From assembly GCF_006345805.1 (NCBI RefSeq), contig NC_043002.1:92938001-93002000 (forward strand): a DNA stretch of 64,000 nucleotides, in the 5' to 3' direction. The notes beneath the pieces are model-generated. The model worked only from the letters and a program-made list of their open reading frames with translations. It searched no databases and was not told the DNA's origin. Position 1 is the first letter of the stretch. Each line of letters opens with the position of its first letter. Made by a program: the position numbers and the translations under genes. The stretch comes from Octopus sinensis (lineage: Eukaryota). Shown here in pieces: positions 34,172 through 54,111 of the stretch.

Positions 34172-34246
34172 AGGTGGAAATTTGCTGATGACTCTGTCTT
34201 TTGCTGCATTCGGGGTGATCAAGATCCGGACGTTGTTGTGAGGCAT
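34172..34246 (-). CDS. RAB34: RAB34/RAB36-family GTPase, first coding exon (MPHNNVRILITPNAAKDRVISKFPP); whole exon is 34172-34287 including UTR
   Basis: Acceptor ttttag at 34288-34289 and donor gtaagt after 34172. In-frame TGA 9 nt upstream of the ATG. DRVISKFP matches the Rab34/36 N-terminal DRV(L/I) motif. Confidence 0.9.
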
Positions 34247-34338
34247 GGTTAGTCAACTACAGCAGGAACTGTTATCACTAGTATCACCTAAAATGTGAAA
34301 CAATATTCAATTACAATTACAATTACAATTACAATTAT

Positions 34339-34571
34339 AAGGCGGTGAGCTGGCAGAAACGTTAGCACGCCGGGCGAAATGCGTAGCCATATTTCGTCTG
34401 CCGTTACGTTCTGAGTTCAAATTCCGCCGAGGTCGACTTTGCCTTTCATCCTTTCGGGGTCGATTAAATAAGTACCAGTTACGCACTGGGGGTGATATAA
34501 TCGACTTAATCCGTGTGTCTGTCCTTGTTAGTCCTCTCTGCGTTTAGCCCCTTGTGGGTAGTAAAGAAATA
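34339..34571 (+). mobile_element. SINE family C, young copy
   Basis: Near-identical to 30556-30788. 15-bp TSD aatattcaattacaa (34302-16 and 34572-86). Confidence 0.9.
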
Positions 34572-34826
34572 AATATTCAATTACAAAACCTTTATTATTA
34601 TGGAACATCAGGTAGCAGATTCAGTGGAATGTTGGACTTGGTGCCTTGTAGTATTTAGAAAAAATGTTTTACATTCTGGGTTCAAATCCTGCTGCTATTG
34701 ATTTTTCTTCTTTTTTAAATTCTTCTGAGGTCAATAAAATAAAGGGCCAGTTAGGTAGAAGTACAACATAATTGAGTGAGGAGTCCCTTCTCTAAACGTA
34801 TAGCTTTGTACGTCATCATCATTTAA

Positions 34827-35046
34827 CCCTTTAGTATTCAGATTATTCTGTCAAATATAACGTTTGTTTAGTTATATTGTTTTGAATTAATGATGCATCA
34901 TCTTGTAGTTAAGAGATTTCAATGATGCGATTGTTTAGTTTTAGAATGATATTGTAAGGTTGGGATGAAGAACCAGATCTGGTCAGTTTCAACAGAAAAC
35001 AGACTAAATATTTTGGCCTGATATGGCCGGTTTGAATGCTAAAGGG
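34827..35046. mobile_element. piggyBac-type MITE family F nested in a SINE D tail
   Basis: TTAA TSD splits catcatttaa|tgtccatttt. Confidence 0.88.
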
Positions 35047-35887
35047 TTAATGTCCATTTTCCATGCTGGGATGCGTTGGACAGTTTGACACAATCTGATG
35101 AGCCACAACGCAGTGTCGGGTTCTAATGTTGGCCTTGTCATGGTTTCTACAGCTAGATGCCCTTCCCAGTGCCAACCACTTTATAGAGTGTACTGGGTGC
35201 TGTTTTTCAAGACATCAGCACTAGTGAGGTCAACTAACTTGTGAAATCATCATCATCATCATCATCGTTTAACGTCCGTTCTCCATGCTAGCATGGGTTG
35301 GACGGTTCGACCGGGGATCTGGGAAGCCAGAAGGCTGCCCCAGGCTCCAGTCTTATCTGGCAATGTTTCTACAGCTGGATGCCCTTCCTAACGCCAACCA
35401 CTCCGTGAGTGTAGTGGGTGCTTTTTACGTGCCACCTGCACAGAGATAAAGAAAGGAAAAGAAAAGAGAAAGGTCCTGCACCTGAGTGGGAGTTTATTTG
35501 AGAGAGAGGAAGAGATGGCTTTATGCTATATGTTGGCAGCTAAAGTATAATAGAGGAATAGGCACTAGTGCCTTACTATAGAGGAGATACATGGCTATCC
35601 TACAATATATACGACTGAGACAGAGAAGCTGGTAGCAAGATAAATGACAGAATATTAGAGAGTACGCTCAAAGTACAAAAAAGAGAGTGTAAGGCAGAAT
35701 ACAGAGAGAAGATCAGCGGGAAGGAAAGGGTGGGTTATTTCATATGAGCATGAAAAGAAAATCACAGATGGTCAGAGATGGGTCTAGAGGAGGATGTAAT
35801 GAATAATGAGCAAGGATCAGAAGTGTGGTTGACGGTAAACATCAGAATGGAGAGAGAAATGAGAGACATAGAAGTAATTGAGGAAGG

Positions 35888-37163
35888 AGGAGGCGACAAG
35901 AGTTGGCTTTTCTCAGCCAACTCTTGTCACCTCCTACGCAACCGCTGAGCCTGGATGCGCATTCATCCATCCGTCAGCAAAGGACCACGTTTCGGACTTC
36001 TCCCACTGGGACGAAGACCGCTTCGCTCAACAAACAAACAAGCATAAGCAGCAGCAGCAGTAGTAGTAGTAGTAGTTGAAAAGTTGAAAACTCTTTAGTG
36101 TCAGTTAACTGTTGTGTTTAGCCAAATAAAATCAAACACTAAGGTACAAGCATGGTTGCATGGTTAAGAAGCTTGCTTTGCAACCATGAGGTTTTGGGTT
36201 CAGTCTCACTGTGTGGCACCATAAACAAATGTCTTCTAATTATAGCCCCTTCTACTTATAGCAAGAGACCAAGCTATCCATGGTTCACTACTTTAACGAT
36301 ACAAGGTGAATTTAAAGTCGTTAGGACATCAGCCTGAATGCCCCATATTTGTTCTGTCTCTCGCCATTCTGAGTTCAAATTGTACTAAGGTCAACTTTTA
36401 TCAGTCATCTTTATTTGGGGGGGGCGGATAAAATAAATGCTAATCCAAGATGCTGGATTAGTGGAAATGTAAGAACGTCAGACTGGATGTTTTGCAGGAT
36501 TTGTTCATGTTCTTTGCATTCTGAATTCAAATTCCACCTTGTCCTATTTGAGCAGTAAACTTAATTTGTCATCCAGTTTAATATTTGTCTCCCACCCATC
36601 CCATCAGCACCTTGGATGCCTTTAGCAGACTCCACTCTGTTTGCAAGCATCCAGACTAGGTTTCCAGTTTAACATTCATCTCCCACCCATCCCCTCAGCA
36701 CCTTTAGCAACTCCATTCTGACTAGGTTTCAGACTAGGCTTCCAGTTTGATGACCCCTCTCTCTCCCTCCCCCTCATTAGACATGAAGGATCTGTAAAGG
36801 TCCTTCAGCACAACCATCATTCCTGACTAAATGAAAAAAAAAAATAGAAAGATGAAGAAATGAGTTGAAGTTTTCTATTTCAAGATCATAGGTTGAGGGA
36901 GTTTTGATTACTATTTCTAGTAGATATAAATGACGGCCTTCTGAACAGTTTCCAAATACCAAATTCTATCACAAGGCATTGGTCAGCCTGGGGCTATAAG
37001 TAGAAGACATTTGTTCATGGTACCACACAGTGGGACTGAACCCAAAACCTCATGGTTGCAGAGCAAGCTTCTTAACCATGCAACCATGCTTGTACCTTAG
37101 TGCTTGATTTTATTTGGCTAAACACAACAGTTAACTGACACTGAAGAGTTTTCAACTTTTCAA

Positions 37164-37207
<44 letters not shown>

Positions 37208-37389
37208 ACTGCTACAGCTGCTGCTGCTTTTGTTTGTTGAGCGAAGCGGTCTTCGTCCCAGTGGGAGAAGTCCGAAACGTGGTCCTTTGCTATTTGTAAG
37301 ACCCGCAGAAGAGAAAGCAGGTCAACCCCCGACACCGAGAGCATCGACGGATGGATGAATGCACATCCAGGCTCAGCGGTTGCGTAGGA
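35888..37389. repeat. Local inverted duplication (arms ~35936-36249 and 36990-37389) with a terminal hairpin
   Basis: Arms are reverse complements across SINE-tail, microsatellite, unique DNA and SINE-head junctions. Confidence 0.92.
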
Positions 37390-37585
37390 AGTCGGAGACA
37401 AGAAACAGGAAGCAAGAGTAAGAGAAAGTTGGAGTGAAAGAGTACAACAGGGGTCGCCACCACCCCCTGCCGGAGCCTCGTGGAGCTGCTCAATAAACAC
37501 ACACAACGCCCGGTCTGGGAATCGAAACCGCGATCCTCCGATTGCGAGTCTGCTACTCTAACCACTGGGCCATTGTGCCTCCACT
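37240..37585 (-). mobile_element. SINE family B variant with a distinct tail
   Basis: Same head; its tail is copied in inverted orientation at ~35936-36030. Confidence 0.75.
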
Positions 37586-37969
37586 TGCTACTGCTACCAC
37601 CAGCACCACCACTACTGCACCTGCTGCTTTATTAAACAATAAAACAGAGTAGTAGTGGTAGTAGTAGTAGTGTAGCCCCAGGTCAACCCTGGTTGAGCAG
37701 ACCTACAATCAAAAGAGGTTACTGTAATGATCATCAGCCTTCTCCCATCCATTCCATATCTAGGACCTAAGGCTACATTACATAGTATGTCCTTCCTTTT
37801 TCAAAATGGTTGAGAGTAATTTGAAAAAGACTGACTGCTATTTCTACCATGTCAAGCAGCCATGTAAAGGTACATTTACATGGCTGTGACAGAGTAATTA
37901 TTTTACAATCATTTTGCTTGTATTAGCAGAGATTCCTACTTGTTACCTACCTAAACGACATAGTAATTA

Positions 37970-38359
37970 CTAGCAGTATCGCCCGGCATTGCTCGGGTTT
38001 GTTTCGACCCTTTAGAATTGAAATTTTTGAAAAGTAAAACTTCTGCAATATGTAGCTTGCTATTCTCTTTAAGTGAACATTTTTCTGGTTGAAATACACC
38101 GAAAAATGGCGACACAGCAGTCAAAAAATCGTAAAAAATAGGGATTTTCATAGAAAAAAAAGCACCTTTTTGATGAAAATAATTTTTGGTGTTAACATGG
38201 TCCGATTTGATTTTATCTTCCACAGAAGGAAGAGCAAGCCTTCTTCTATCATACTCTCAATTTTGGTCAACTTGCGCCGCAGGGTCTCGGGGGAGATAGT
38301 GCTAGTTGAAGGCTACCAAACCTGCCACACACAGACAACTTCAGCTTTATATATATAGA
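37970..38359 (-). mobile_element. Non-autonomous Helitron
   Basis: 5' TCTATATATATAAAG, 3' CCCGAGCAATGCCGGGCGATACTGCTAG with GC hairpin before CTAG, inserted between A and T, no TSD. Confidence 0.88.
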
Positions 38360-40192
38360 TTTACGGCTACATTATATAATGTATCATTCCTTTTCCAAAA
38401 TGGTCATAATTTGATAGAGCGTTGAGTGTTATTTCTAGCAGGTCAAGCAGCCTTGTAAATGTACCCTTGTTGGCTTGTGACAGATAAATTATTTTAAGAC
38501 CACTGAAGTTTGTGCTAGCAGAGATTCCTGCTTGTTACCTAACTTAATGACATAGTAATTAATTAATTTAGGTGGTGTAACAGACAGGAAATTATACCAA
38601 GACAAACAACAATATATATTGTCTTCATATTATCAACAACCATGGAAAGCATGTGATGTGTTTCTCAAAAACACAATGCTTGTCCAAAATCGCCCAATGA
38701 TAACACCTTTCACTCATGACACACCTGTTCACATGACTACAGTATTTCAACAGGTGTTAATGGTAGTGTTAGTGTGAAAGTATAATTAAAGTGGTGAGCT
38801 GGCAGAATTGGTAGCATGATAGGCAAAATGCTTAGTGACATTTCATCCATCCTTACATTCTGAGTTCAAATTTTGCTGAGGTCAGCTTTGCCTTTCATCC
38901 TTTCAGGGTTGATAAAATAAGTACCAGCTGAGCACTGGGGTCGATGTAATCGACTAACCTTCCTCCTCCAAAATTGATGGTCTTGTGCCAAAATTTGAAA
39001 TCAATGTTCTACATTCAAGGGCAGTGAGCTGGCAGAATCATTACCATGCTAGGTAAAATGCTTAGCAGCATTTCATCTGTCCTTATTTTCTGAGTTCAAA
39101 TTCTGCCAAGGTCAACTTTGCCTTTCATCCTTTCAAGGTTGATAAAATAAGTACCAGTTGAGCACTGGGGTCAATGTAATTGACTTACCCACTCACCCAA
39201 AATTGCTGGCTTTGAGCCAGAATTTGAAGCCAATATGTCATAGCATAATTGAAACTCTCAATAATGATAATCCTTGCTTTTGTTTAGGATAAAAAAGGAT
39301 TAAGCTCCTTCCCAAGTCATATTGACTCAGGCCCAGTTTCCCCAGTTTCCTTGGCACATACATTTCCCCACTGGACAGGACACCAGTCTCCTACAAGATT
39401 ACACATTTTTGCCAGTTGAGTGGACTAGAGCAATGTGAAATGAAGTGTTTTGCTCAAGAACACAACGCATCATTCGATCCAGGAATCGAAACTACAATCT
39501 TACAATCATGAGTTCAACACCCTAACCACTAAGCCACAAACCTCCAGTTTTGTTTAGTCCCAGGTTAATCCTGATCCAGCAGATCTTATAACCAAAGGTA
39601 TTATCAAGTTTACCATATAGGAATGTTAGTGGCGGTGCATAGCTTAGTAGTTAGGGGGTTAGACTCATGATTGTAAGATTGTGGTTTTGATAAGGCAACA
39701 CATTGTTCTTGAGCAAAACACTTCATTTCATGTTGTTCAAGTCCACTCAGCTGGTAAAAATGAGTAATCCTGCAATGGACTGGCATCCCATCCAGGTGGT
39801 GAATTTATATGCCATGGAAACCAAGAAACTGGTCTTTGTGAGTTGGTATGACTTGAGAAGGTACGAATTGAGACTTCTTTATTAACAGTGAAAGGATAAA
39901 AACAAGATTGGATTCAGTGTGATTTGAACTCATCAGATAGTTAGAACAATAGCTGCACAGCATTTTGTCCAGTGCTCTAATGATTCTGTTAGTTTACTGA
40001 CACTGAGAAGGTTGAACAATGAACCTGGAGCTAAACAACAATAACAACTTTTACTCATTATGAATCCACCTCTGGCTGATATTTCTGACATATTTGCGCC
40101 ATCCTTAATTTCCAAATTTAAACTTCAGCTCTTGCCATAAGCAAAGCCACCACTTGCCCCAAAGCCTTGTTACACATCTATGTATGTGTGCG

Positions 40193-40224
<32 letters not shown>

Positions 40225-40330
40225 TAATATAAATAACATATAAATATATGAATATATACATACATATATGTATGTGTACATGCATATATTTATATTATTA
40301 TATGATCGAATGCCACGCATCCATTTCCAA

Positions 40331-40385
<55 letters not shown>

Positions 40386-40575
40386 TATATATATATATGA
40401 GTCACTTTAACAGCAAATACTCTGTCATAAAGACACATACCGCAGAGTTTTGTGATGGCAAAAGAAATAGCTGAAACTAGGACACATGATCAACAATGAA
40501 ACATATAATTTAACCTGTGACAGTTTGGTAGAGAAATAACGATGGTCTGGTCAACCATTATTATTATCATTATCA

Positions 40576-40627
<52 letters not shown>

Positions 40628-40897
40628 CATTATTATTATCATTATTAAGCTAAGGGCTATGGTGCTGTCAGAGCCAGTTGATGAAACTACCACAATTGCC
40701 TAAGGTAATGTCACTTATTAGAGAGTATTCTGACATGTAATCTTGCTGAATTCAGGTTAGGATTTGGGTGAACTAATGAGGAATATACACCTTATAGCCA
40801 TAATTCTACTAACTTTATATTTCCTAATACTGACAGGTAACAAGTAAAAGACAAAAGTCTAGAGGAATTTTTCTTTCACTTAACCTAATGTCTAGAT

Positions 40898-41445
40898 CAG
40901 TGGTCCTCAACTGGGGTCTATATAAAATTTGTGGGGAGGCCCACATAACAAACTAGTAAATTGGAGAACCACAATAGTATTTTAAGGGCCCCTTGAAAAA
41001 AAATTTGCTTTAGATGTATGTATTGGTATGTTTCTTTCTCCAACATTATACATAGTTCAATATTTTACAATATTTTGTAAATGTAAGGGTGAAAAACAAA
41101 ATAGGAATTTTGAAAGAATTATCTATAAAACTAGTTTTTAACCCTTTAGTGTTCAGATTATTCTATCAAACATAATGCTTATTGATTCCCATTGATTTGA
41201 ATTAATCATGCATTATCTCATATCTTCAAGTTCTTGATGGTGTAATTACTTCATGTAGAATAACATTGTAGGGTAGGTGTGAGAGCCTGGATCTGGTCAG
41301 TTTGAACATAAAACAGATTAACTATTTTGGCCGGATATGGCCGGTTTAAATACTAAAGGGTTAAACATCAAATGGCTATTGGGGTTCACCAGAATAAAAT
41401 AGTAATCAAAGGGGTCCATATTTAAAAAATGGTTGAGTACCCCTG
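40898..41445. mobile_element. hAT (Charlie-like) MITE with nested piggyBac MITE
   Basis: CAGTGG..CCCCTG ends; 8-bp TSD gtctagat/gtttagat. A truncated copy at 60784-60897 is cut by a Helitron. Confidence 0.85.
41142..41360. mobile_element. piggyBac-type MITE family F nested in a hAT MITE
   Basis: TTAA TSD and intact TIRs. Confidence 0.9.
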
Positions 41446-41469
41446 GTTTAGATCAATCATGAGCAAACT

Positions 41470-42670
41470 GCAACCCATAGGACTGGCAGGATTTGAACTC
41501 AGAAGGTAAAGAGCAAGAAAAAATTCCATGAAGCATTTTTACCAACACTCTAAACAGTCCTATGAGCTGATCACCTTAAATGGTTTCTATTTAAGCTTCA
41601 AGCTAGTAATTTTGAAGGGCAGAGATTAGTTGATTACACTGACCTGGTTCTTAACTGGTGCTTGATTTTATTCACCTTGAAAAAGTGAAAGGCAAAATTG
41701 ACCCTTTATCTTTGATCTCAGAATTTAAAGTGATGGAACAGAAATTGTAAGGCTTTTTTTTTTTTCTGGTGCTCTAACAAATCAACAGGCTGACTGAAAA
41801 TGGTTTCTGATTTTGGATCAAGGTCAGCAATTTTTAGGGCAATGGGGGGAGCGGAGTTCATTACATCAACCCCAGTATTGGACTGGTACTTTTATTATAC
41901 TGACTCTGTTCAGATGAAAGGCAACTGCAGCTTCAGTGAATTTTGAACTCAGGATGTAAGGAACCAGAAAAAATACTACAAGATATTTTTTCCAACATAC
42001 TAACAACTCTGCCAGCTCACCAATCACTACTACTACTGCTACTACAAAATGATAATAAAATTAATAATCCTTTGTACTAAAGGCACAAGGTCTGAAATTT
42101 GGGGGTAGGGGAGTGGTCTAATACATCAACCCCAATGATTCACTGGTACTTAATTTATCAACCCTGACACAATGGAAAGCAAAGTCAACCTAGGTAAAAT
42201 TTGAACTCAGAATGTAAAGACAGATGAAATGCCATTAGGTTTTTTGCCCACCGTGCTGACCATTCTCCCAGCTCACCACCTTAATAATAACAAGAGCACT
42301 CAGAGAGTGCAAACCTCCGCCAAGGTAACGCCAATGTTCTCTCAACAATCAGCCAAAGATGACTTTTAAAATAAGAATATCTGAAATAAACTCAACCTCT
42401 CTCACAAACAAGAATACTAAAAATGAACCCAACTGCTCTCAAAAATTAAGTAAAAAAAAAACAGGAAAAAATAATCCAGAATCCTTGTCAGGTACCAGAT
42501 CGATCTCAAAATCTAATCAATTCATGCTAGTCATGAGGCCAAATATCCCTGAAAGTTTCATCCGAACACATCCAGCAGTTCTTGAGATATCTTATCCATG
42601 GGCAAACAAACAAACACAACTGAAAACAATACTTCCGCCTTCACTGAGGTGGAGAATAATAATAATAATA

Positions 42671-42711
<41 letters not shown>

Positions 42712-43400
42712 GTTTCAAATTTTAGCACAAAGCCAGAGATTTCAGGGAAGTGGCTAAGTCAAATACATCGATCCCAGTAATTAACTGGTACTTATTAGCT
42801 ATTATTAGGGACAGCTACAATACTTAGGAGGGTTCTTGGCATCTAAGGTTGCTTGTTCTAGCCCCATGTTAGGAATTTTTCTTTTCCAACAGTCTAATCT
42901 GTTGTGTGTATATGAATAATAATGGTTTCAAATTTTGTCACAATGCCAGCAATTTCAAGGGAGACCAATTGGTACTTATTTTATTGACAAAGTCAACCTT
43001 GGCGGAATTTGAACTCAGAACATAAGGATGGACAAAATGCTGCTAAGTATTTTGCCTGGCATGCTAAGAGTTCTACCTGTCACCAGGGTAAAGGATGAGG
43101 GAAGCAACATAAAGTGTTGGGGTTTACATACAAAGAAATGATAAAAAAGAAGTCTAATAATAATAATAATAATAATGATAATTTCTGATATAAGCACAAA
43201 GCCAGGAATTTTGAGGACAAGAGGGTTCAGTCAACACCACCAGCACTTCACTAGTACTTTATTTTATTGATCCTATAAAGGATGAACTGCAAAATTAACC
43301 TCAGCAGGATTTGAACCAGAATGCAATGAGTTTGAACAAATGTTGCTAAGCATCTCATCCAACTCTCTAACAATTCAGCCAGCTTGCCCCCTTTTAATAG
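41470..43400 (-). mobile_element. Cluster of at least six older SINE C copies, same orientation
   Basis: Repeated ggtacttattttatc...gtcaacct...gaatttgaactcag blocks separated by (AAT)n. Further eroded copies at ~5515-5945, 7455-7865, 15295-15510, 16000-16185, 17480-17725, 31770-31930, 32780-32980, 38790-39235 and 55480-55615. Confidence 0.75.
42289..42656. mobile_element. Helentron/HINE-like non-autonomous element
   Basis: Subterminal cctccgcc and terminal hairpin ttccgcct/aggtggag; sits in (AAT)n; internal (CAAA)n. Confidence 0.5.
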
Positions 43401-43546
43401 TTTCTGATTTAGGCACAGTTGATTTTAGGAAAGACACCCCACCCCACCCACCCCAGTACTTGACAAGTACGTTATTTTATCAACCCTAAATTGAACCCAA
43501 AAAACCCAGAAGAAACACTGCAAGATATTTTTTTTCAGATGCTCAT

Positions 43547-43714
43547 AGGCGCAGGAGTGGCTGTGTAGTAAGTAGCTTGCTAACCAACCACATGGTTCCG
43601 GGTTCAGTCCCACTGCGTGGCATCTTGGGCAAGTGTCTTCTGCTATAGCCCGGGCCGACCAATGCCTTGTGAGTGGATTTGGTAGACGGAAACTGAAAGA
43701 AACCCGTCGTATAA

Positions 43715-43754
<40 letters not shown>

Positions 43755-43980
43755 ATGTGTGTGTGTGTTTGTGTGTCTGTGTTTGTCCCCCTAGCATTGC
43801 CTGACAACCGATGCTGGTGTGTTTCCCTCCCCGTCACTTAGCGGTTCGGCAAAAGAGACCGATAGAATAAGTACTGGGCTTACAAAGAATAAGTTCCAGG
43901 GTCGATTTGCTCGACTAAAGGCGGTGCTCCAGCATGGCCGCAGTCAAATGACTGAAACAAGTAAAAGAGAAAAGAGAAAG
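43547..43980 (+). mobile_element. SINE family A
   Basis: Full-length copy. Head-only or eroded copies also occur at ~2455-2615, 25655-25823, 36965-37090, 52860-53010 and 60675-60780. Confidence 0.9.
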
Positions 43981-44434
43981 AGAATTCTGCCAACTTGCCT
44001 CTTTTATAATGATTTCTGATTAAAGCTCAAGGCCAACAATTTGAGGGGAGGGGGATAAGTTGAGACCATCAACTCCAGTATTTAACTGGTACTTCAGATG
44101 AGATGACAAAGGAACAAGATACCTGGCACCTTGTTGTACTCAAGAAGACCTGTCCTCCACAGCAGAAGTGTTAAGGCTGCATCCCCTGGTGAAGAAGATC
44201 GGCTTGCAAGAGTCCAGTGCCACATAAAAAGCATTCATGCTGGTAGCACGTAAAAGCACTCTCATGCTAGTGACATGTTAAAAGCACCCAGCACACTGTA
44301 AAGTGGTTGGCATTAGGAAGGGCATCCACCCATAGAAACCAAGCCAAATCAGACAAGAACTTGGTGCAGCTCTCCAGCTTGCCAGCTCTGGTTAAACCAT
44401 CAAACCCATGCCTGCATGGAAAACGGGCGTTAAA

Positions 44435-44502
44435 GGAGGAGGAGGAGCAGCAGGAGCAGGAGGAGGATGATGATTGTTGATGATGATGATGATAATGGAT
44501 GA

Positions 44503-44549
<47 letters not shown>

Positions 44550-44600
44550 TGATGAAGAAGAAGAAGAAGAAGAAGAAGAAGAAGAAGAAGAAGAAGAAGA
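44435..44600. repeat. Compound (GAG)(GAT)(GAA) microsatellite
   Basis: Direct reading. Many shorter (TA)n, (ATT)n, (CA)n and (CAT)n tracts occur throughout the window. Confidence 0.95.
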
Positions 44601-47142
44601 AAAGGATGAAAGGCTAAGTTGACTGCAGCAGACTTTGATCTCAGAAAAGGGTCAAAAGAAATACCACAGGACAGACATTAGTAATTAATAAGTATTTCCT
44701 AATCATAAAAGATTTCAGTAATGAACTATGTCACACGTCTTTACAAATGTGAAAATTATTTGAGGGAGGAATTTAAGATGGGCGGAGAAGGAAATTAAAC
44801 ATGGACAGAAATAGATGGTGATGTAGACGGGGAAGAGAGGAACGTGATGGACATTTGAGGTGAAGGAGAAATAGAAGAAACTAAGGAGGGAGTACGACAG
44901 AGAGTAAGAGAGGGAGATGGGAAAAGACTAAGGAAATGAAAAGAAAAAGAGAAGGGAATGTAAGAAAGAAACGGGAGACCGAAAGGAGGAGGAGGAGAAA
45001 TAGGAAGAAATGGAAGAGACAGGGTGGATGTGAAGGAGAAGGAGAAGACGAGGAGAATAAGACAAACGACATGTGACAGGAAAGATAGAGAGAATACTAA
45101 GGACAAAAATGTTTAGGAGGGGAATGTTTAGGAGACTTATTGTGAAGGAATAAATAGTAAAAGGTGATTGAAACGATGGAGAGAGCCGTGGGAGGGAGAT
45201 GTGCGCAAACAAGTTGCTTTGATATCCATTCCTTACAATTTTCGGCAATAAATTTGAAAATTATAGGGGTAATGTTAGATGTCCAAATGAGTAAGTACAA
45301 CCCCTCCTAATAGGAAAACTAGGAAGTGGAGGTCAAAAGGCGCACATCAAGACGCGAATAGAATTATAATAGAAGAAAAGTGTTGCTAATCAAGCTACGT
45401 AAAAGAAATTTACTAGAAAGTTATATAAGTATATAATAAATGTAAAAATTGAATTCAGTCATATTTTTAACGTGTTTAAAAGCAAAACTCCATTCTTTTA
45501 ATCTTTTTTTTTTTTTTTTTTTTGTTAGTGGTTTAATCATAGGACTGCTGCCATGCTGGTGCACTACCTTAATTTATTTTCATTCAGGTTTGTTGTTGCT
45601 TCGTGGCTGGAAGCTGGTCTGTGATTGAGATTGCAACAGCTGATCTTCCTTGAGTGTATCTTTGAATGATTGGCTGGTCCGGTATCGTCGTTAGGAATTT
45701 ATGCTTTTTTTTTTTTTTTTTTTTGCTTTTTTTAATGCTTCAGTTAAGGTCCGTCCCTTTTATATTTCTGATTTCCTTAGGTAAGCAGTTGAACAACTGA
45801 GGACGTCTAAATATCTAACTGATACAATAGGGTATTGTATCAGTTCGTGCATTAATTCTATATAAGGCCGAAGTTTGGAACAAGCCCCTCCAGGATTTTC
45901 CATACGTATATGACAATCTCTCTCTCTCTCTCTTTCAAATGTGTGTTTGTCTACATATTAAACTTTTCTACTTCTTGGAAGTTTCCGATAATTTTCAAGA
46001 ACACTGCAGTGTCGTTGAAAAACGCCATAAAATGCGTCATTGAGGTAAGTTCTACATCGTGCACTGGACAGAATAGGGATGCTAGCATTGGGGGATTAAG
46101 ATGTGCGGATAGACAGTGCTGCATTATTTATTCATAAACCTGTCCCAACACATCATCACAAAGATGATGATGATGATGATGATTATGGTGGCCTTGATGG
46201 TAGTGATGACGGGGGAGTGGATGATGAATACAGCGACGTTGAGTATAATTAGATATAAACAATATTATTTTTCTGAAAGTACTTTTTTTAATTGATCAGA
46301 AACAATTTCAGTTTGAAGAAATTCCAAAATAAATTTCTTCAAACTGAAAGGACTGCCCGCAAAAAAATGTCAAATCACTTTATCTTAAGTAATTTTTTTA
46401 AGAACAAATTTTTAGACAAGAGGCACAAATTTAGGAGGTGAGTTACTGATGATAAAGTTCTTCGTCTTATATTATAATTCCATTCATCTCTAAGATGCTT
46501 TACAGAAATAATTAAATCGATTCCAGTACTTGACTGGACCTTAATTTTAATTAGGCTTTAGGCCCTCAATTACTGAGGTTGTAGGGATGTCATCGTAATA
46601 TAAGGCGTGTCTTGAGTATTTTTCTTTTTTAACTTGCCAGACCTATCCCTCTCCAGATGCGACCATAGCCGATTTGTTCCTGAGGGAGACAGAACCACCC
46701 TGAAAGATGAACTGTATTTTATCAAACCCCCAGAGGAATGAGTTGATGATGACAATAACAACAACGACAACGATGATGGTGGTGAGGATGATGATGATGA
46801 TGATGATGACCACCACCACCGCCACCACCACGGCGGCGGTGAATGATGATTATGGTGAAAACGACGATAATGAACGATATTTCATAATTGACAAGAAAAA
46901 TACCAGTAGGTACTATAAAAGAAACGAGCTGTCCAAATCAGTCACTTCTGAAAATATCCGGGTAAGATCCTGTAATCGGAGAATGTAAAGTTGATGATGG
47001 TTAGAAACGAGTCGGGCATCATCACAACAAATAATTCATACAGTTAAAAATCAAATTACATCATTGAATCTAGAGTGAAACTGAGAGATAAAATTAAACT
47101 TACAACAGCGTAGACAGCATAGATTCCAATCGAAAAACTTAC

Positions 47143-47230
47143 TTGTAATTTAAACTTGTTAACTTCTTTCTACAGTGTTAACAGATTCCACCCGACTTGT
47201 GATGTGTGTGTATCGCTTCGCAACGAGCTG
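47143..47230 (-). other. RAB34: Probable non-coding first exon of the RAB34/36 gene
   Basis: Consensus donor (AA|gtaagt) at 47137-47142 on the minus strand in non-repetitive CpG-rich DNA next to the RPL23A start. The 5' boundary is a guess. Confidence 0.45.
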
Positions 47231-47353
47231 ACCTCAATTTTCTCTTACGACCCCTGACCTTTGACACGGAAGCGGAAATATTTCTCATGACACGGTACTC
47301 CGTGTTCTTTTACGTGTCAACCCCGATTTCACTAATCTGTCTCTTACACCAAG
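47231..47353. promoter_or_regulatory. Compact bidirectional promoter region between RAB34/36 and RPL23A
   Basis: CpG-rich. Tandem ETS-like acGGAAgcGGAAat at 47266-47279, TGACCTTTGAC at 47255-47265, pyrimidine tracts before the ATG, and YY1-like CAAGATGGC overlapping the RPL23A start codon (common in ribosomal protein genes). Confidence 0.6.
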
Positions 47354-47408
47354 ATGGCTCCCAAGAAGAAGGTTTCATCGAGCAAAGGAGGAAAATCTTC
47401 CTCTAAAA
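47354..47408 (+). CDS. RPL23A: 60S ribosomal protein L23a (uL23) exon 1 (MAPKKKVSSSKGGKSSSK)
   Basis: MAPK start typical of RPL23A. Donor gttagt at 47409, phase 1, in frame with exon 2. Confidence 0.88.
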
Positions 47409-48038: not shown

Positions 48039-48103
48039 GATCTTTTTTTTCTCCTTACCGTTTTAATATGAACGAGTTTATTTATTTACCCAGTGTTTTT
48101 AAT

Positions 48104-48297
48104 GGTACTACTTTAGAAGAGTGGTCCCAGCGCGCTTACTCGCGCAAGCTACTCGTGACTAGTCAATCCTCTGTTTTAAAGAATTATTTACTTAGTGTTT
48201 TTGTGTTTTATTTACTTTGCTAGGTAGTCGTGGGATCGACTAGTCAGACTAACTTGCGCGAGTGCGCGCACCGGGACCGTTTTTCTTAAGTAGTACC
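48104..48297. mobile_element. GG-terminal foldback MITE in RPL23A intron 1
   Basis: ~66-bp imperfect TIRs (GGTACTAC...GTAGTACC) and perfect 9-bp TSD gtttttaat (48095-103 and 48298-306). Confidence 0.88.
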
Positions 48298-49060
48298 GTT
48301 TTTAATTACTAATTCCTTGTTTTAACGTAACGTTAATTAAGTACTGGAATTTCTGGTATTCAAAAAGGTTAAATTTTAAAGATCATGCTCTCATTTACAT
48401 TATATTTTAAATTGTCAACAATTCATTGGCCAACTACCATGTTGGAGCACTTATCTATTACTCTGATCGAGATAATTTTAGTTGCATGTACATTTTTTAC
48501 ACGTGGCATATTTAATTCATCGTTAATAATATGTAGCTTTTGTTTCCCCGGCGTCAGGCGGATGATCAAGTTCGATACTATACTGGGTCCAACATAGTTT
48601 CTAAAGTATAATTGTGATTTTCCGATTTGTGTTGAATTGTGGTATCTCATACTCCGTTACCCGAAAAAGTACTTGACGTTCCGGTTGGTTATTACGCATG
48701 CGTTGAAAATATGCAAATAAAGTGAGTGTTTGGCGCCAGGGCATCCCCGACCGGTCAGTTTTGCTTACGCGGTGTCAGTCCCAATTTTTATCCCGCATAT
48801 TCGTTCCTAGCAAAAGCGAAACAAGATTAATTGGACGATGCGGACATCATTTAATTCATCGACTCCTGACCACTTAACTGTATTCACTTTGACAAGATTC
48901 TTTTCGTTTATATGCATATACAAGGTTGATTTTTTTAAAAGGGTAGAGTTTCGGAATAGCTATTCTTCGTGGAAAGGGTAGATCGGGGTTTTTTTCCCCA
49001 CACAGGTGTTTCGATTCTTACTCGTCATTTCTGTATCCCATTTCTTTCCCCACTAGGTAT

Positions 49061-49498
49061 GGGCTCTCTTGTCTGCTGCTGTGCTCATTAACCTCTTTTA
49101 CCCTAAATTGAGGTGTTCATCCAAGGTGCTCCCCCATGTTGGCCAGTCAGCTGCTTGGCTTTCCCAGGACTCTACATTGATAAAGGCCTTCAAATCTCAT
49201 TTTACAACATCCTCGTATGAAGCCGAGGACGACCGGTGGCTCTTCCAGATGCCAGCTCCCCATAGAAAATTTCCTTAGAGATGCGGTGGTCGTGTCCTAG
49301 CCAGTGCATTGTCGAAGCAGGGTGAACATGCTGGGAAGGCCTGCTTGATTCAGGACCGAGCGCAGTAACTCCAACAACTAAGATCGTATACAAATGTGAT
49401 CTATGTGACGGAGACTATCACTCACATTTAGGTCTGTTTAGCTACAGAGACGGTGCTCCAGCTGAGCTGAAAAGGATGCTACCCATGGTCGGCTCTGA
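49061..49498. mobile_element. BovB-like RTE 3' fragment with inverted 5' part, in RPL23A intron 1
   Basis: 49061-49357 reads on minus as VLNQAGLPSMFTLL..WLGH..FYGELASG..GRPRL..AADKRA. 49358-49498 reads on plus as ERSNSN..YKCDLCDGDYHSHLGLFSY plus the ccatggtc tail. Possible TSD taggtat. Confidence 0.8.
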
Positions 49499-49607
49499 TA
49501 GGTATAGGGATTCGAGTGAGCTATCCCAAAGCTTTCACTTGCAGTCATAGTAACCCGTAAATTTGTATAATGGAGGAGTCTAAAATAGTTACATTTTTGT
49601 TTTGCAG

Positions 49608-49896
49608 CTACCAAAAAACCAGAAAAGAAAAGAGAACCACGCGTCCGTAGACGGCCTACCGCTATTAGCAAAGCCAGGTCAAAGGCTGTGAAGGCAAAGA
49701 AGGCCGTTTTGAAAGGTATTCAAGCAAAGAAAGCTATTGTTAAGGGACTTCAAGCAAAGAGAGCAGTCTTAAAAGGTATTCATCCCAGGAAAACCAAGAA
49801 GATACACACAAGTGTGAAGTTCAGGAGACCACGTACTCTTCGATTGCCGAGGGACCCGAAATATCCCAGGAAAAGCACTGGCACACGTGAAGATAA
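49608..49896 (+). CDS. RPL23A: RPL23A exon 2, L23eN region with a triplicated AKKAVLKG motif
   Basis: ttttgcag acceptor and gtaagt donor. Encodes [27 protein letters not shown]. Confidence 0.97.
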
Positions 49897-50282: not shown

Positions 50283-50459
50283 ATTTGATCAATTTAGGAT
50301 TGTAAAATATCCTTTGACCACAGAATCTGCTATGAAAAAGATTGAAGACAATAACACATTGGTATTTATTGTTGACAAGAGAGCTAACAAACATCAAATC
50401 AATCAGGCTGTGAAAAAATTGTATGACATTGATGCTGAAAAAGTCAATACATTAATTAG
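50283..50459 (+). CDS. RPL23A: RPL23A exon 3
   Basis: ctttcag acceptor and gtgagt donor. Encodes [23 protein letters not shown]...VNTLI. Confidence 0.98.
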
Positions 50460-50583
50460 GTGAGTATTTCATCCTGGAGACCACTTAATGTTACTTGGTG
50501 GGAAAACTTTTATGACCAGTCTGTGTTTCATTTATGGTGTCTTTGGAGGAAGATTGGCAGTTTCCTAGCAGTTTGGGTTTTAA

Positions 50584-51161
50584 CCCTTTAGTGTTTAAAC
50601 CGGTCATATCCGGCCAAAATATTCTACCTATTTTATGTTCAAACTAGTCAGATATGGTCATTCATAGCTATCTTATTGTGTCATTTTAAAAATAAGCAAT
50701 CACATCATTGAAATCTCAAAGCCATGAAATGATGCAAGATTAATTTTACTTGGTGTGAATACATAAGCTTTACATTTTACAGAATAATCTGAAAGCTAAA
50801 GGGTTAATAGTGAATGCATTAGATAAGTACTTTATTTAACATATACTTGAAGATAGTCTTTCTATCAGGGAGTTAATAGATACATGTACAAAAGTAACCT
50901 TAACCCTTCAGCATTCAGATTACTTTGTCAAATGTAATGCATATTCTCATTTTTTAAAATTCTTATGTGTTATCTCATCATCATTTTCATCTGCTTTCCA
51001 TGCTGGCACAAGTTGGAAGATTTGATATGGAGCTGTCACACAGGCCCGTGTGTGGGAGACAGCGATTTTACTTTTTGAGATATTGATATTGTTTTATTTT
51101 TAGAATGACATTGTAGGATAGGTGTGAGAGTTTGGATCTAACCAGTTTAAATGCTGGAGGG
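50584..51161. mobile_element. Two family F MITEs in opposite orientation in RPL23A intron 3
   Basis: Copies at 50584-50803 and 50904-51161, each TTAA-flanked. The second carries a SINE fragment. Confidence 0.85.
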
Positions 51162-52757
51162 TTAAAGGTGTTGTGGGTTTTTATATTGTTTGTAAATGTT
51201 GTATCACAATGTAAGGCACTTGACCTTGCTTCGCTGCTATAGGCTTCTTATACATAGTATTTTATTATACTTGTCTTTCAGCGACACATTGAGTTGTTGC
51301 ACATGATTTTTATTAGGCTCGTCATTTTTTAAATTTAATTGAAAGGTGCTTTTCTCTCCTCCCCCTCAGCAGCTAGTGCATTGGCTGGTTTTCTGTTATA
51401 TGTTAGCAGGATATATACTGGCATGTTGTGTCTACAATTCCATTCCATTGTACTACAGCTTGGTCAAGTGCCTGCCATGAACTCATACCTTGGTAACTTA
51501 TAGAATTTGGTACATGGAAACTTCTGGAGTCTGTCTTATTGATTCTGCTTATGCCTATATAGATCTAAAATCTGGCACTTGAATGTGTATATATATATAT
51601 CTTGGAATATATACATACTCCATCACCACTACCTTGTCCTTGGGTTCCTTTAGTAGAGTGCACTCTATTGTAAGCATTCAAGCCAGGTCTTCAGTTTGAG
51701 GATATTATCTTCCCACTTGCCAATCTGAAGGTCCTATAAAGAATTATGGACCCTTCCTTCCCTAAGCTATGAAGGAAGAAAATGTTCTTTAACTTAACTG
51801 TTTGGCATTGAGGTTGGTATGAATATTGATGTTAGTCTGTATGTCGTTGAAATTAGTTATTTCTTTCAAAGGTTTTAGTCTATTTCCAATAACTATGTTT
51901 ACTTTTAACATAATAGATGTATTCATTAGGCATTATCAACCCAAGGCTATGATAGAATAATACCTCAATAATATATTTGTCTAATGTAGCAGGTATGATA
52001 TGAATATAGATTAAGCTTGCTAAAATGTCCCAAAATCCTTCATAGTAAGATAGTGAATTATTGATACAGGAACTGACCCAAACTTAACTCTTGAGCTTGA
52101 TTCAAGTTGTGAAAAGGTCACTAGATGAAACTTGAGGTCATCTTTGTTTTACATATATTTTTTCCATGCTGCTGTGAGCCATTATTGTTGCTCAAGCAAA
52201 GGACTTTTTATTCTACCAGTCTTTGGAATTGCATGATAAAGAATGTCAACTCTTTCTCCTTCCCAAAATTGTTTCAAAGCACAGAATGTAACTAACGTGC
52301 TGCTTCCATATAGTTTCTGTCTACCATTCAGAGCATTGATTAGTATGTAGTTGCGTTAAAATACACTTGCTCAAAGTGCCACCGCATCAACAATATTTAG
52401 CGTATTTTCTATGCTGACAAGGGTTGAACAACTTGACAGGGGCTGGCAAAGTAGGTTCCATGATCTGTTTTGGTTGGTTTCTATAGCTGGATGCTCTTCC
52501 TGATGCCAACCACTTTACAGTGTACTAGGTGCCTTTTCAATGATACCTTGGTTTTAGGATCTCATTTCTGTTGTGGTGTGCAGGTCTCTTGAGTACAGCA
52601 GAGTAAGATAGAATTGAAAACATAGTTACAAAGCGGATGCTATATCTCCCTACTCTCTTGCCTGTTGATTTGTAGTTCATCTTCAATAATTTAAATGTTT
52701 ATTTGTCAAGTGTCAGTATTGTCTTTGCCTTAAATTCTGATTATTTTATTTTTGTAG

Positions 52758-52827
52758 GCCTGATGGAGAGAAGAAAGCTTACGTCAAATTAGTGTCAGAT
52801 TACGATGCTCTGGATATTGCAAACAAG
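52758..52827 (+). CDS. RPL23A: RPL23A exon 4 ([24 protein letters not shown])
   Basis: tttgtag acceptor, gttagt donor, phase 2 in and 0 out. Confidence 0.98.
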
Positions 52828-54073
52828 GTTAGTATTTTAACATTTTTATAACCTATGCAAGTATGGCTGTGGTACGTAGTTTGCTTCCAAGCCATATAGT
52901 GTTGGGTTCAGTCCCACTGTAGGGCACCTTGGTCAAGTGTCTTCTATAGCCTTGGGTCAGCTAAAGCTCTGAGTGGGTTTGGTAGACAAATTGAAAGAAG
53001 CTTCTATGTAAGTGTTTGTCTCCTTGCCTTGACTACACATGATAGTTGCAAACTTGTGTCACTTTCTTGGGGAAATCTTACCCTACATGAGAAAAGATGA
53101 GGGTTGCTGACAGGAGTATCCAGCTGTAGACAACAGATCCATTCAAATTCCATCTGACCCATGTGAGAATGGAAAACTGACTGTTAAAACAGTTATGGTG
53201 AATTGTGCAATAGAGGTGCATATCTTTTTATAAATATAGTTTCTTAGAATTTCTGAGTACATTTGGAATATACTGTAATTAACATAGGGATGTCTGTAAT
53301 GAAATGGGTTGTAAAGAAGTTTCTGATTTCAGTTCCAATGTGTGATACCTTTTATCAAAGATTCAGATTAACCCAATCCTTGTGAGCTAAATTATAAAAT
53401 ATCATATCAGCCATGTCAAAATATACTAGCATATTATTCTAATCTTTGCTTTTACAGAATATCAAGTAACTCCTCTTGGCTCATACTGCATCCAATATAC
53501 TCAGTAATGTGGTTGCAGATGATTAGAGAATACATGACATCTTAATATCCTTTTCCTCCTGTCTCATGGCCATCTCTAGTTCAGTTGATTCAAGAGTTCT
53601 TTCAGTACATTGTAAAGCAAATGTTGGGTGGGGGGGTATTCATTAATGAAATCTGCAAGCAATGTGTTCCTCTGACCAATCTTTAAGGGCCCTGGCTCCC
53701 ATTAAGAATTTCTCCTGAAAGTGTTAACCCATCTAACTTTTGCTGACATCGAATGTGGTGGTGCAGAGCTTCTGTTGGCTTTCCCATACTCTTATTTGTA
53801 TTTGTGCTATCTACTTTGTGGAATTGTTAGGCAAAATGCAAGTTACCTCCAATATAGAACTATGGTGGGCTTGAATGATTTTTGTATTTAACCCTTTAGC
53901 ATTCAAACTAGCCTCTGCCATCTATCCTAAAATGTAATTCTAAAAGTAATTACTTCCTCAAAATCTCAAAGCTACAAGAGAATGCATGAATAATTAAGAA
54001 TTACATTTGAAAGTAATTTAAATAGGTTTCAGCTAATTTGTGTAACTAATTTTTTGTTTTTTTCTATTTTCAG

Positions 54074-54088
54074 ATCGGCATCATCTAA
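54074..54088 (+). CDS. RPL23A: RPL23A exon 5 (IGII-stop); total CDS 606 nt, 201 aa
   Basis: ttttcag acceptor followed by ATC GGC ATC ATC TAA, the canonical IGII C-terminus. Confidence 0.97.
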   Translation: MGII

Positions 54089-54111
54089 ACAGTACTGTAT
54101 AGCTTTATACG

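What the first reader, a model, noticed from the sequence alone, without database searches (positions are those of the whole stretch)
34172..54088. RAB34/36-RPL23A head-to-head pair as in human
The sequence shows a RAB34/36 gene on minus and RPL23A on plus diverging from a ~200-bp region. Human RAB34 and RPL23A are adjacent and divergently transcribed at 17q11.2 (established). If orthologous, the linkage predates the protostome-deuterostome split and survived the coleoid genome reorganisation and TE-driven intron expansion to >44 kb. This points to a constrained bidirectional promoter linking a ciliary/Golgi-lysosome Rab to a ribosomal protein.
Basis: partly seen in the sequence, partly recalled or inferred. 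Interest (0 to 1): 0.8.

Follow-up and report, generated by a model that had tools for sequence, protein, structure and literature searches.

The report
Ancient RAB34–RPL23A head-to-head gene pair
An octopus Rab34/36 GTPase gene and the ribosomal protein gene RPL23A sit back-to-back as they do in abalone, a damselfly, an acorn worm, a shark and mammals, so this is one more ancient bilaterian gene pair that probably shares a promoter.

Summary
Both genes are real and on the stated strands. RAB34/36 is on minus, with its ATG exon at 34246-34172 and five more coding exons down to 3215. The gene then runs off the window. RPL23A is on plus and complete, from ATG 47354 to the stop at 54088.

The two start codons are 13.1 kb apart, not 200 bp. 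The "~200 bp" figure holds only if RAB34 has a non-coding exon 1 at about 47.1-47.25 kb. No octopus transcript was available, so that exon is inferred. The supporting evidence:
- A conserved splice acceptor lies 41 nt before the ATG.
- Unrelated transposons sit just upstream of that acceptor in two octopus species.
- Two perfect opposite-strand donors lie 210-250 bp from the RPL23A ATG.
- The only CpG-undepleted promoter domain is there.
- A cuttlefish-type transcript has a non-coding exon 1 that starts 154 bp from the cuttlefish RPL23A ATG.

RAB34/36 and RPL23A are divergent immediate neighbours in Octopus (two species), Acanthosepion, Haliotis, Ischnura, Ptychodera and Callorhinchus. The pairing was not seen in a sponge, and a sea star was unresolved.

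The bilaterian age of the linkage is supported. This is a new example of a known class, of moderate interest.

The parts
34172..34246 (-). RAB34/36 first coding exon, coding part (ATG at 34246; MPHNNVRILITPNAAKDRVISKFPP); donor GTAAGT
   Evidence: tblastn 100% to the Octopus RAB34-like N-terminus; splice check
34247..34287 (-). 41-nt 5'UTR part of the ATG exon, preceded by the acceptor TTTCACATTTTAG (AG at 34289-34288)
   Evidence: Acceptor and UTR are identical in O. bimaculoides, while sequence upstream of the acceptor is unrelated TE in each species. The cuttlefish equivalent acceptor is confirmed by a transcript.
34288..47103 (-). Inferred RAB34 intron 1 (about 12.8 kb; the 5' boundary would be 47142 if the other donor is used). 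TE-rich, including a SINE at 34334-34508 directly upstream of the acceptor.
   Evidence: 42% is covered by within-window repeats. No gene is called in the orthologous O. bimaculoides interval. No RNA genes were found.
47104..47250 (-). Inferred non-coding RAB34 exon 1. The donor GTAAGT puts the exon's last base at 47104, or at 47143 for the alternative donor. The 5' end (TSS) is not determined and is placed by analogy with cuttlefish.
   Evidence: Two of only three perfect minus-strand GTAAGT donors in the 13.1-kb interval lie here. Both are conserved in O. bimaculoides. The cuttlefish transcript has the same architecture. No octopus transcript was available.
47104..47353 (.). Putative shared bidirectional promoter block. 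It has a tandem ETS-type motif ACGGAAGCGGAAAT at 47266-47279, an ACGTG motif, and a pyrimidine-rich TOP-like stretch (CTCTTAC) just before the RPL23A ATG.
   Evidence: Sequence read. The motifs recur in cuttlefish (ACGGAAACGGAAAC) and abalone (GCGGAAGCGGAAC). CpG o/e is about 1.0-1.2 against a window median of 0.39. It has 0% repeat coverage.
47354..47408 (+). RPL23A exon 1, coding part (MAPKKKVSSSKGGKSSSK + 1 nt)
   Evidence: tblastn; splice model
49608..49896 (+). RPL23A exon 2
50283..50459 (+). RPL23A exon 3
52758..52827 (+). RPL23A exon 4
54074..54117 (+). RPL23A exon 5 (IGII, stop at 54086-54088) and the AATAAA signal at 54112-54117
32437..32528 (-). RAB34/36 coding exon 2 (AFHPDGTPYLQTNFHPKVKNACLENRTGRV)
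25049..25114 (-). RAB34/36 coding exon 3 (P-loop GDISIGKT)
14585..14686 (-). RAB34/36 coding exon 4 (switch I region)
10001..10065 (-). RAB34/36 coding exon 5 (WDTAGQERFKCIAASYYRGAN)
3215..3342 (-). RAB34/36 coding exon 6 (ends ...FLVGTKKDTL). The remaining 3' exons lie beyond the window.

Best explanation
The window, from an Octopus species, carries a Rab34/36 pro-ortholog on minus and the ribosomal protein gene RPL23A (uL23) on plus as immediate head-to-head neighbours. [quoted passage not shown]

In octopus the RAB34 start codon has been pushed 13.1 kb away from RPL23A by transposon accumulation in a 5'UTR intron. A short non-coding RAB34 exon 1 most likely remains beside the RPL23A core promoter, with its donor at 47104 or 47143. 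The two transcription start sites would then be less than about 200 bp apart and would use one CpG-undepleted promoter block that carries ETS-type motifs.

What is shown: gene identities, exon structures, orientation, and synteny in seven species of four phyla. A transcript-defined non-coding exon 1 next to RPL23A is also shown in a cuttlefish. What is inferred: the octopus exon 1 and TSS, and that promoter sharing is the selective reason why the pair has not been separated.
For: Gene models:
- RPL23A is 201 aa from 5 GT-AG exons, 200/201 identical to O. bimaculoides uL23.
- RAB34 gives 176 aa from 6 GT-AG exons. All 120 listed hits are Rab-34/36 where a source names them.
- The gene is pro-orthologous to vertebrate RAB34 and RAB36.

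Synteny, as divergent immediate neighbours with ATG-to-ATG distance:
- Window: 13,107 bp.
- O. bimaculoides: 16,482 bp.
- Acanthosepion: 4,234 bp.
- Haliotis: 1,620 bp.
- Ptychodera: 622 bp.
- Callorhinchus: 5,103 bp.
- Ischnura: 4,312 bp.
- Cattle gene order is ...PROCA1, RAB34, RPL23A, TLCD1... (PMC4784436).

Exon 1 and promoter:
- Nt 1-114 of sepiid transcript L003 map to the minus strand of the A. pharaonis genome at L004 9847-9734. They then splice to an exon that starts 49 nt before the RAB34 ATG. RPL23A's ATG is at L004 10001, so the transcript's 5' end is 154 bp from it.
- In octopus the same kind of acceptor lies 41 nt before the ATG. It is conserved in two species, with unrelated TEs immediately upstream.
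- Only 3 perfect minus-strand GTAAGT donors occur in the 13.1-kb interval. Two of them lie 210-255 bp from the RPL23A ATG. The third is in a SINE.
- CpG o/e is 1.0-1.7 across 46.7-49.0 kb against a median of 0.39. The only other peak upstream of the ATG exon is a young SINE.
- The tandem GGAA motif is shared with cuttlefish and abalone RPL23A promoters.
- GABP/ETS sites are known to drive bidirectional transcription in human (PMC2077898).
Against: - No octopus RAB34 transcript exists in the searchable collections, so neither the TSS nor the exon 1 donor is observed.
- The cuttlefish exon 1 has no detectable sequence similarity to the octopus candidate region (z = 0.5).
- Octopus-octopus identity in the promoter block (91-95%) is no higher than in several other intergenic blocks. 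Conservation therefore does not single it out.
- The cuttlefish intron 1 donor reads GC rather than GT in the A. pharaonis genome.
- The pair is absent in a sponge and unresolved in a sea star.
- RP genes and a ciliogenesis Rab are not obviously co-regulated, so the selective rationale is unproven.
Confidence: 0.7

Rival explanations
1. The pair is linked, but in octopus it no longer shares a promoter. RAB34 is transcribed from a start site elsewhere in the 13-kb interval, for example a TE-derived promoter or the conserved GA-rich block at about 44.8-45.1 kb. The adjacency would then be a relic.
For: The start codons are 13.1 kb apart. There is no octopus transcript. Other blocks in the interval are as conserved as the promoter or more so, at 95-98% over 44.66-44.95 kb. 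A third perfect donor lies at 39183.
Against: The donor at 39183 lies in a 16-copy SINE. No CpG-undepleted domain other than a SINE exists between 34.3 and 46.7 kb. The cuttlefish transcript shows that exon 1 is kept next to RPL23A despite a 3.9-kb intron. Two perfect donors sit exactly where predicted and are conserved in O. bimaculoides.
Confidence: 0.2
2. The adjacency is ancient but selectively neutral. Two independent promoters happen to abut, and the pair simply has not yet been broken in the sampled lineages.
For: The pair is absent in the sponge and not seen near one sea-star copy, so it can be lost. The two genes have no known functional link. ATG spacing varies 26-fold (622 bp to 16.5 kb).
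Against: Identical orientation and immediate adjacency are retained in four phyla and through the coleoid genome reorganisation (context PMC9023564). In cephalopods the intron expanded while exon 1 stayed at the partner's promoter, which is the pattern expected under constraint. 5'-5' pairs with short spacing are the class shown to be preferentially retained (PMC3514665).
Confidence: 0.12
3. The constraint is long-range. Regulatory elements for one gene lie inside the other gene's introns (a bystander or regulatory-block model), rather than in a shared core promoter.
For: This mechanism explains many conserved microsyntenic pairs (PMC3514665). RAB34 introns are large.
Against: Neither gene is a developmental regulator. 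RAB34 introns are mostly TEs. RPL23A introns hold no detectable conserved RNA genes. The strict divergent orientation with close 5' ends fits promoter sharing better.
Confidence: 0.05

Closest known systems
Human/mammalian RAB34-RPL23A neighbourhood at 17q11.2 (SUPT6H-PROCA1-RAB34-RPL23A-TLCD1-NEK8)
   Same: The same two orthologous genes are adjacent. The cattle gene order is given in PMC4784436, and both genes are listed as chr17 neighbours in PMC9525008. The divergent orientation in human is from my own knowledge. A shark shows it directly.
   Different: The flanking genes differ. The octopus gene downstream of RPL23A is a phosphorylase kinase gamma homolog, not TLCD1/NEK8. Octopus RAB34 is more than 44 kb long with TE-filled introns, against a few kb in mammals. 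No snoRNAs were detected in octopus RPL23A introns, whereas human RPL23A hosts SNORD4/SNORD42 (my own knowledge). Vertebrates also have a second paralog, RAB36, elsewhere in the genome.
Conserved ancestral microsyntenic pairs (CAMPs) with 5'-5' orientation, e.g. HSPE1-HSPD1 (Irimia et al. 2012, PMC3514665)
   Same: A divergent orientation is kept across phyla, the 5' ends lie close together, and promoter sharing is the proposed constraint.
   Different: HSPD1/HSPE1 are functionally coupled and co-expressed. RAB34 and RPL23A have no known functional link. The pair is not named in the main text of PMC3514665, whose supplement was not available. It is also absent from the supplements of three related surveys that were searchable.
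GABP/ETS-driven bidirectional promoters (Collins et al. 2007, PMC2077898)
   Same: A tandem GGAA (ETS-type) motif lies between the inferred divergent start sites in a CpG-undepleted block.
   Different: Binding and bidirectional activity are untested here. The motif match is short and only marginally above shuffles (12/300).

Membership tests
Rab34/Rab36 subfamily of Rab GTPases | P-loop GxxxxGK[ST], switch II WDTAGQE followed by RFKCIA..YYRG, and an NKxD-type motif (GTKKD) | tested here: met
   GDISIGKT, WDTAGQERFKCIAASYYRGAN and LVGTKKD are present in the spliced exons.
Rab34/Rab36 subfamily of Rab GTPases | A long (~55 aa) N-terminal extension before the P-loop, with the conserved FHPKV..AC..TG block | tested here: met
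   57 residues precede the P-loop. FHPKVKNACLENRTGRV aligns with RAB34/36 orthologs.
Rab34/Rab36 subfamily of Rab GTPases | Closest relatives are RAB34/RAB36 rather than other Rabs; phylogenetic position | tested here: met
   All 120 listed hits (E <= 7e-49) are Rab-34/Rab-36 where a source names them. The NJ tree places the gene with molluscan orthologs, outside a vertebrate RAB34+RAB36 clade with bootstrap 0.99.
Rab34/Rab36 subfamily of Rab GTPases | C-terminal prenylation cysteines | not testable with these tools
   The 3' exons lie outside the window. The O. bimaculoides and sepiid orthologs end in KCCH.
Ribosomal protein uL23 (RPL23A/L25) | Ribosomal_L23eN (PF03939) and Ribosomal_L23 (PF00276) domains in a complete ORF | tested here: met
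   The 201-aa spliced ORF is 200/201 identical to O. bimaculoides 60S L23a, which carries both domains.
Bidirectional-promoter gene pair (divergent genes, TSSs <1 kb apart) | Head-to-head orientation with no gene in between | tested here: met
   RAB34 is on minus and RPL23A on plus. No gene is called between them in O. bimaculoides. The interval holds only low-complexity or TE ORFs and no RNA genes.
Bidirectional-promoter gene pair (divergent genes, TSSs <1 kb apart) | Transcription start sites less than 1 kb apart | tested here: inconclusive
   There is no octopus transcript and the ATGs are 13.1 kb apart. Indirect support comes from the acceptor, donors and CpG domain. The feature is met in a cuttlefish, where the RAB34 transcript's 5' end is 154 bp from the RPL23A ATG.
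Bidirectional-promoter gene pair (divergent genes, TSSs <1 kb apart) | One element drives transcription in both directions | not testable with these tools
   This needs reporter or deletion assays.
Conserved ancestral microsyntenic pair (sensu Irimia et al. 2012) | Orthologous genes adjacent in both protostomes and deuterostomes, with conserved orientation | tested here: met
   Mollusca (4 species), Arthropoda (Ischnura), Hemichordata (Ptychodera) and Chordata (Callorhinchus) all show the divergent pair. A motif check confirms the RPL23A strand in five loci.
Conserved ancestral microsyntenic pair (sensu Irimia et al. 2012) | Presence in non-bilaterian animals (pan-metazoan age) | tested here: not met
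   In Oscarella lobularis the divergent partner of RAB34/36-like is CENP-S, and no RPL23A lies within +/-10 kb. Only one non-bilaterian was sampled.

The most novel reading that the evidence does not exclude
Across Bilateria, RAB34/36 has no autonomous promoter and depends on the RPL23A promoter. Its short non-coding first exon stays tethered to the ribosomal-protein promoter even when transposons push the coding exons 4-16 kb away. Transcription of a ciliogenesis/membrane-traffic Rab would then be coupled to the growth-responsive ETS/TOP-type promoter of a ribosomal protein gene. That dependence would be what has kept the pair together for more than 500 million years.
Probability: 0.2. Interest if true: 0.6.

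Novelty: new member of a known kind. Interest (0 to 1): 0.4.

Why it matters
The pair adds a clean, easily testable example to the few hundred gene pairs whose adjacency has survived since the bilaterian ancestor.

It has one instructive feature. In cephalopods the coding body of RAB34 has drifted up to 16 kb away through transposon insertion. In the cuttlefish, by transcript evidence, the non-coding first exon nevertheless stays beside the RPL23A promoter. That is the signature expected if the shared promoter, rather than the genes themselves, is under constraint.

The pair also links a ribosomal protein gene to a Rab needed for intracellular ciliogenesis (bioRxiv 10.1101/2020.10.29.360891). 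Any regulatory coupling between them is untested.

On the practical side, the window shows that public octopus RAB34 models are incomplete. P0002 lacks the P-loop exon, and P0015/P0016 lack exon 6.

Tried and rejected
- **Octopus RAB34 transcript.** None is in the protein-indexed collections. Only three imperfect genome models appeared. Look-ups of P0002 and P0025 were not on record.
- **Cuttlefish exon 1 against the octopus candidate region.** No signal was found (z = 0.5).
- **Octopus-octopus conservation profile.** The species are too close (83% overall), and the promoter block does not stand out.
- **snoRNAs in RPL23A introns, as in human.** There were no Rfam hits. The only sub-threshold match, to mir-598, lies in a trinucleotide repeat. 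No tRNAs were found.
- **Extended synteny with human NEK8.** The downstream kinase is phosphorylase kinase gamma, not NEK8.
- **The sigma-70/terminator scan.** It is irrelevant for a eukaryote and gave nothing.
- **Literature.** No paper names this pair as conserved or as sharing a bidirectional promoter. The supplement of Irimia 2012 is not held. The supplements of four other surveys lack the pair.
- **A promoter directly upstream of the RAB34 ATG exon.** This was rejected. The CpG peak there is a SINE, and the upstream sequence is not shared with O. bimaculoides.


Full report
**What is in the window**

The window is cephalopod DNA. It aligns at about 83-94% nucleotide identity with Octopus bimaculoides chromosome CM046606.1 around 76.15-76.22 Mb, colinear through genes and intergenic DNA.

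On the minus strand, motif scans and tblastn found Rab34-type exons. With exact GT-AG boundaries the coding exons are 34246-34172, 32528-32437, 25114-25049, 14686-14585, 10065-10001 and 3342-3215. Together they give 176 aa with an intact P-loop (GDISIGKT), switch II (WDTAGQERFKCIAASYYRG) and GTKKD. The remaining exons lie beyond position 1.

On the plus strand, RPL23A is complete. Its exons are 47354-47408, 49608-49896, 50283-50459, 52758-52827 and 54074-54088, all GT-AG. They encode 201 aa, 200/201 identical to O. bimaculoides 60S L23a. An AATAAA signal lies at 54112-54117.

Position 34172 is the 3' end of the RAB34 ATG exon, and 54088 is the RPL23A stop.

**Checking the '~200 bp' claim**

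The two start codons are 13,107 bp apart (34246 and 47354). They are 16,482 bp apart in O. bimaculoides. The ~200-bp figure requires an untranslated RAB34 exon 1 next to RPL23A. The evidence for that exon is as follows.

- **Acceptor.** The ATG exon is preceded, 41 nt upstream of the ATG, by a consensus acceptor (TTTCACATTTTAG|G). The acceptor and UTR are identical in O. bimaculoides. The DNA just upstream of the acceptor is a SINE in the window and unrelated repeat sequence in O. bimaculoides, so no conserved promoter lies there.
- **Donors.** On the minus strand, the 13.1-kb interval holds only three perfect GTAAGT donors. One is inside a 16-copy SINE. The other two have exon ends at 47104 and 47143, which is 211-250 bp from the RPL23A ATG. 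Both are conserved in O. bimaculoides.
- **CpG.** CpG observed/expected is 1.0-1.7 across 46.7-49.0 kb, against a window median of 0.39. The only other peak upstream of the ATG exon is the SINE itself.
- **Repeats.** The 46.7-47.35 kb block is free of within-window repeats, whereas the putative intron 1 is 42% repeat.

**Transcript evidence from a relative**

In the cuttlefish Acanthosepion pharaonis, a 265-aa Rab34 gene (minus, ATG at L004 5766) and RPL23A (plus, ATG at L004 10001) are also divergent neighbours. A Logan transcript contig from a closely related sepiid (L003, run SRR29271484) encodes the full 265-aa protein and has a 164-nt 5'UTR.

Nt 1-114 of that transcript align to L004 9847-9734 on the minus strand. 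The transcript then jumps to an exon that begins 49 nt before the RAB34 ATG, behind a TTTATTTTAG acceptor. The RAB34 mRNA 5' end is thus at most 154 bp from the RPL23A ATG. It is about 130 bp from the likely RPL23A start in the pyrimidine tract.

The architecture matches what is inferred for octopus: a non-coding exon 1 at the RP promoter, one 5'UTR intron, and an ATG exon with a 40-50-nt UTR. Two caveats apply. The A. pharaonis genome reads GC, not GT, at this donor. The exon 1 sequence itself is not alignable to octopus (z = 0.5).

Promoter motifs are shared, however. Octopus has ACGGAAGCGGAAAT (47266-47279) and cuttlefish has ACGGAAACGGAAAC. Abalone has GCGGAAGCGGAAC and GGAAACGGAAGC on the RPL23A strand. 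A similar pyrimidine-rich ...CTCTT(T)AC..CAA(G/C)ATGGC start region is also shared. Tandem ETS/GABP sites are a known driver of bidirectional transcription in human (PMC2077898).

**Orthology**

All 120 listed database hits (E <= 7e-49) are Rab-34 or Rab-36 where a source names them. In an NJ tree of 15 sequences (226 columns, 300 bootstraps), vertebrate RAB34 and RAB36 are each monophyletic (1.0). Together they form a clade (0.99) that excludes all invertebrate sequences. The octopus gene groups with the sepiid and abalone genes. The octopus gene is therefore a pro-ortholog of both vertebrate paralogs, and 'RAB34/36' is the right label.

**Synteny survey**

Annotated contigs around RAB34/36 orthologs show RPL23A (Pfam Ribosomal_L23eN + Ribosomal_L23) as the immediate, divergently oriented neighbour in the following species.

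| Species | Group | ATG-to-ATG distance |
|---|---|---|
| Octopus (window) | cephalopod | 13,107 bp |
| Octopus bimaculoides | cephalopod | 16,482 bp |
| Acanthosepion pharaonis | cephalopod | 4,234 bp |
| Haliotis rufescens | gastropod | 1,620 bp |
| Ischnura elegans | insect | 4,312 bp |
| Ptychodera flava | hemichordate | 622 bp |
| Callorhinchus milii | chondrichthyan | 5,103 bp |

A degenerate RPL23A motif search confirmed the expected strand in five of these loci. For mammals, a cattle study lists the order SDF2, SUPT6H, PROCA1, RAB34, RPL23A, TLCD1, NEK8, TRAF4 (PMC4784436). This matches my recollection of human 17q11.2.

There were two exceptions:
- In the sea star Patiria miniata, the queried copy has a second, tandem Rab34-like gene upstream and no RPL23A within 10 kb. 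This case is unresolved.
- In the sponge Oscarella lobularis, whose genome is very compact, the divergent partner is CENP-S and no RPL23A lies within 10 kb.

The linkage is therefore at least bilaterian. Nothing here shows that it is older.

**Introns and transposons**

With exon 1 at about 47.1-47.25 kb, the part of RAB34 inside the window already spans about 44 kb. Within-window repeats cover 18-63% of its introns. A roughly 6.1-kb insertion carrying a reverse-transcriptase ORF (27759-29796) is present in the window but absent at the orthologous O. bimaculoides site. For comparison, the CDS span is 28 kb in abalone, 12.8 kb in Ptychodera, 7.8 kb in Callorhinchus and 1.3 kb in Oscarella. 'TE-driven intron expansion' is a fair description.

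**Mechanism and rivals**

The best-supported reading is an ancestral compact bidirectional promoter. Ptychodera still has only 622 bp between the two ATGs. In cephalopods this promoter has been preserved by keeping RAB34 exon 1 in place while the 5'UTR intron absorbed insertions.

- Shown: adjacency, orientation and age of the pair, and the cuttlefish exon 1.
- Inferred: the octopus TSS, a truly shared element, and selection on it.

The rivals are a relocated octopus TSS (about 0.2), neutral persistence of two abutting promoters (about 0.12), and long-range regulatory entanglement (about 0.05). Conservation between the two octopuses cannot discriminate among these.

**Novelty**

Conserved 5'-5' microsyntenic pairs are a known class. 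Irimia et al. 2012 describe hundreds and explain them by shared cis-regulation (PMC3514665). Schmidbaur et al. report that 275 metazoan microsyntenic blocks survive in a squid despite genome reorganisation (PMC9023564).

I found no paper that names RAB34-RPL23A as such a pair. Irimia's supplementary list could not be read. I rate the pair as a new member of a known kind, of moderate interest (0.4). It is a good test case for promoter tethering, but it is not surprising to specialists.

Noticed in passing
window 25541-31693 (RT ORFs at 27759-29057 and 29050-29796, plus strand): A GC-rich (52-55%) insertion of about 6.1 kb carries reverse-transcriptase ORFs of a LINE-like element inside a RAB34 intron. 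About 200 bp occupy the orthologous O. bimaculoides site, so the insertion is lineage-specific.
   Followed up: partly
window 34334-34508, with more than 10 further copies (e.g. 5492-5953, 7412-7881, 38781-39236, 42052-42290): A SINE-like family is present in 10-16 copies within the window. One copy sits directly upstream of the RAB34 ATG-exon acceptor and produces a false CpG peak there.
   Followed up: partly
window ~59650-60900 minus (orthologous to L002 21333-26067): The gene downstream of RPL23A, on minus, is a phosphorylase kinase gamma catalytic-subunit homolog. Its last exon matches PDB 8jfk_C at E = 4.7e-15. It is not NEK8/TLCD1 as in mammals, so only the two-gene core of the neighbourhood is shared.
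   Followed up: partly
window 62179-63244 plus: ORFs have an apurinic-endonuclease-like N-terminus typical of LINE elements (…CCIQEVRWRG…). This is probably another non-LTR retrotransposon, and it was identified by eye only.
   Followed up: no
window 44656-45110: A purine-rich (GA-rich, strong GC skew) block about 2.3-2.7 kb upstream of RPL23A is 92-98% identical to O. bimaculoides, more than the promoter itself. Part of it recurs elsewhere in the O. bimaculoides locus (L002 2510-2666). Its function is unknown. It could be a repeat or a regulatory element.
   Followed up: partly
window 47409-49607 and other RPL23A introns: No snoRNA or other Rfam family was detected in RPL23A introns, although human RPL23A hosts SNORD4/SNORD42 (from memory). 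CpG o/e stays at 1.2-1.7 through most of intron 1 (47.5-49.0 kb). A LINE RT-tail fragment lies antisense at about 49202-49393.
   Followed up: partly
Public protein models P0002 (O. vulgaris), P0015 and P0016 (O. bimaculoides): The public octopus RAB34-like models are defective. P0002 skips the P-loop exon. P0015 and P0016 lack the exon encoding LLITAFDL…GTKKDTL, which tblastn did not find in L001. All six exons within the window are intact.
   Followed up: partly
L008 (Patiria miniata) 1-2822 and 10001-16361: The sea star has two tandem, same-strand Rab34/36-like genes. Whether RPL23A lies upstream of the first copy could not be checked.
   Followed up: no
Anopheles cluster of P0146: Some Anopheles Rab34/36 entries are fused or clustered with 'dynein axonemal intermediate chain 4' models. 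This hints at a different, cilium-related neighbour in mosquitoes and possible loss of the RPL23A pairing in Diptera.
   Followed up: no
window 47408/49608 junction: Residue 19 of RPL23A is Thr in the window (A|CT) and Ala in O. bimaculoides (G|CT). This is the only amino-acid difference between the two proteins, and the codon is split by intron 1.
   Followed up: yes
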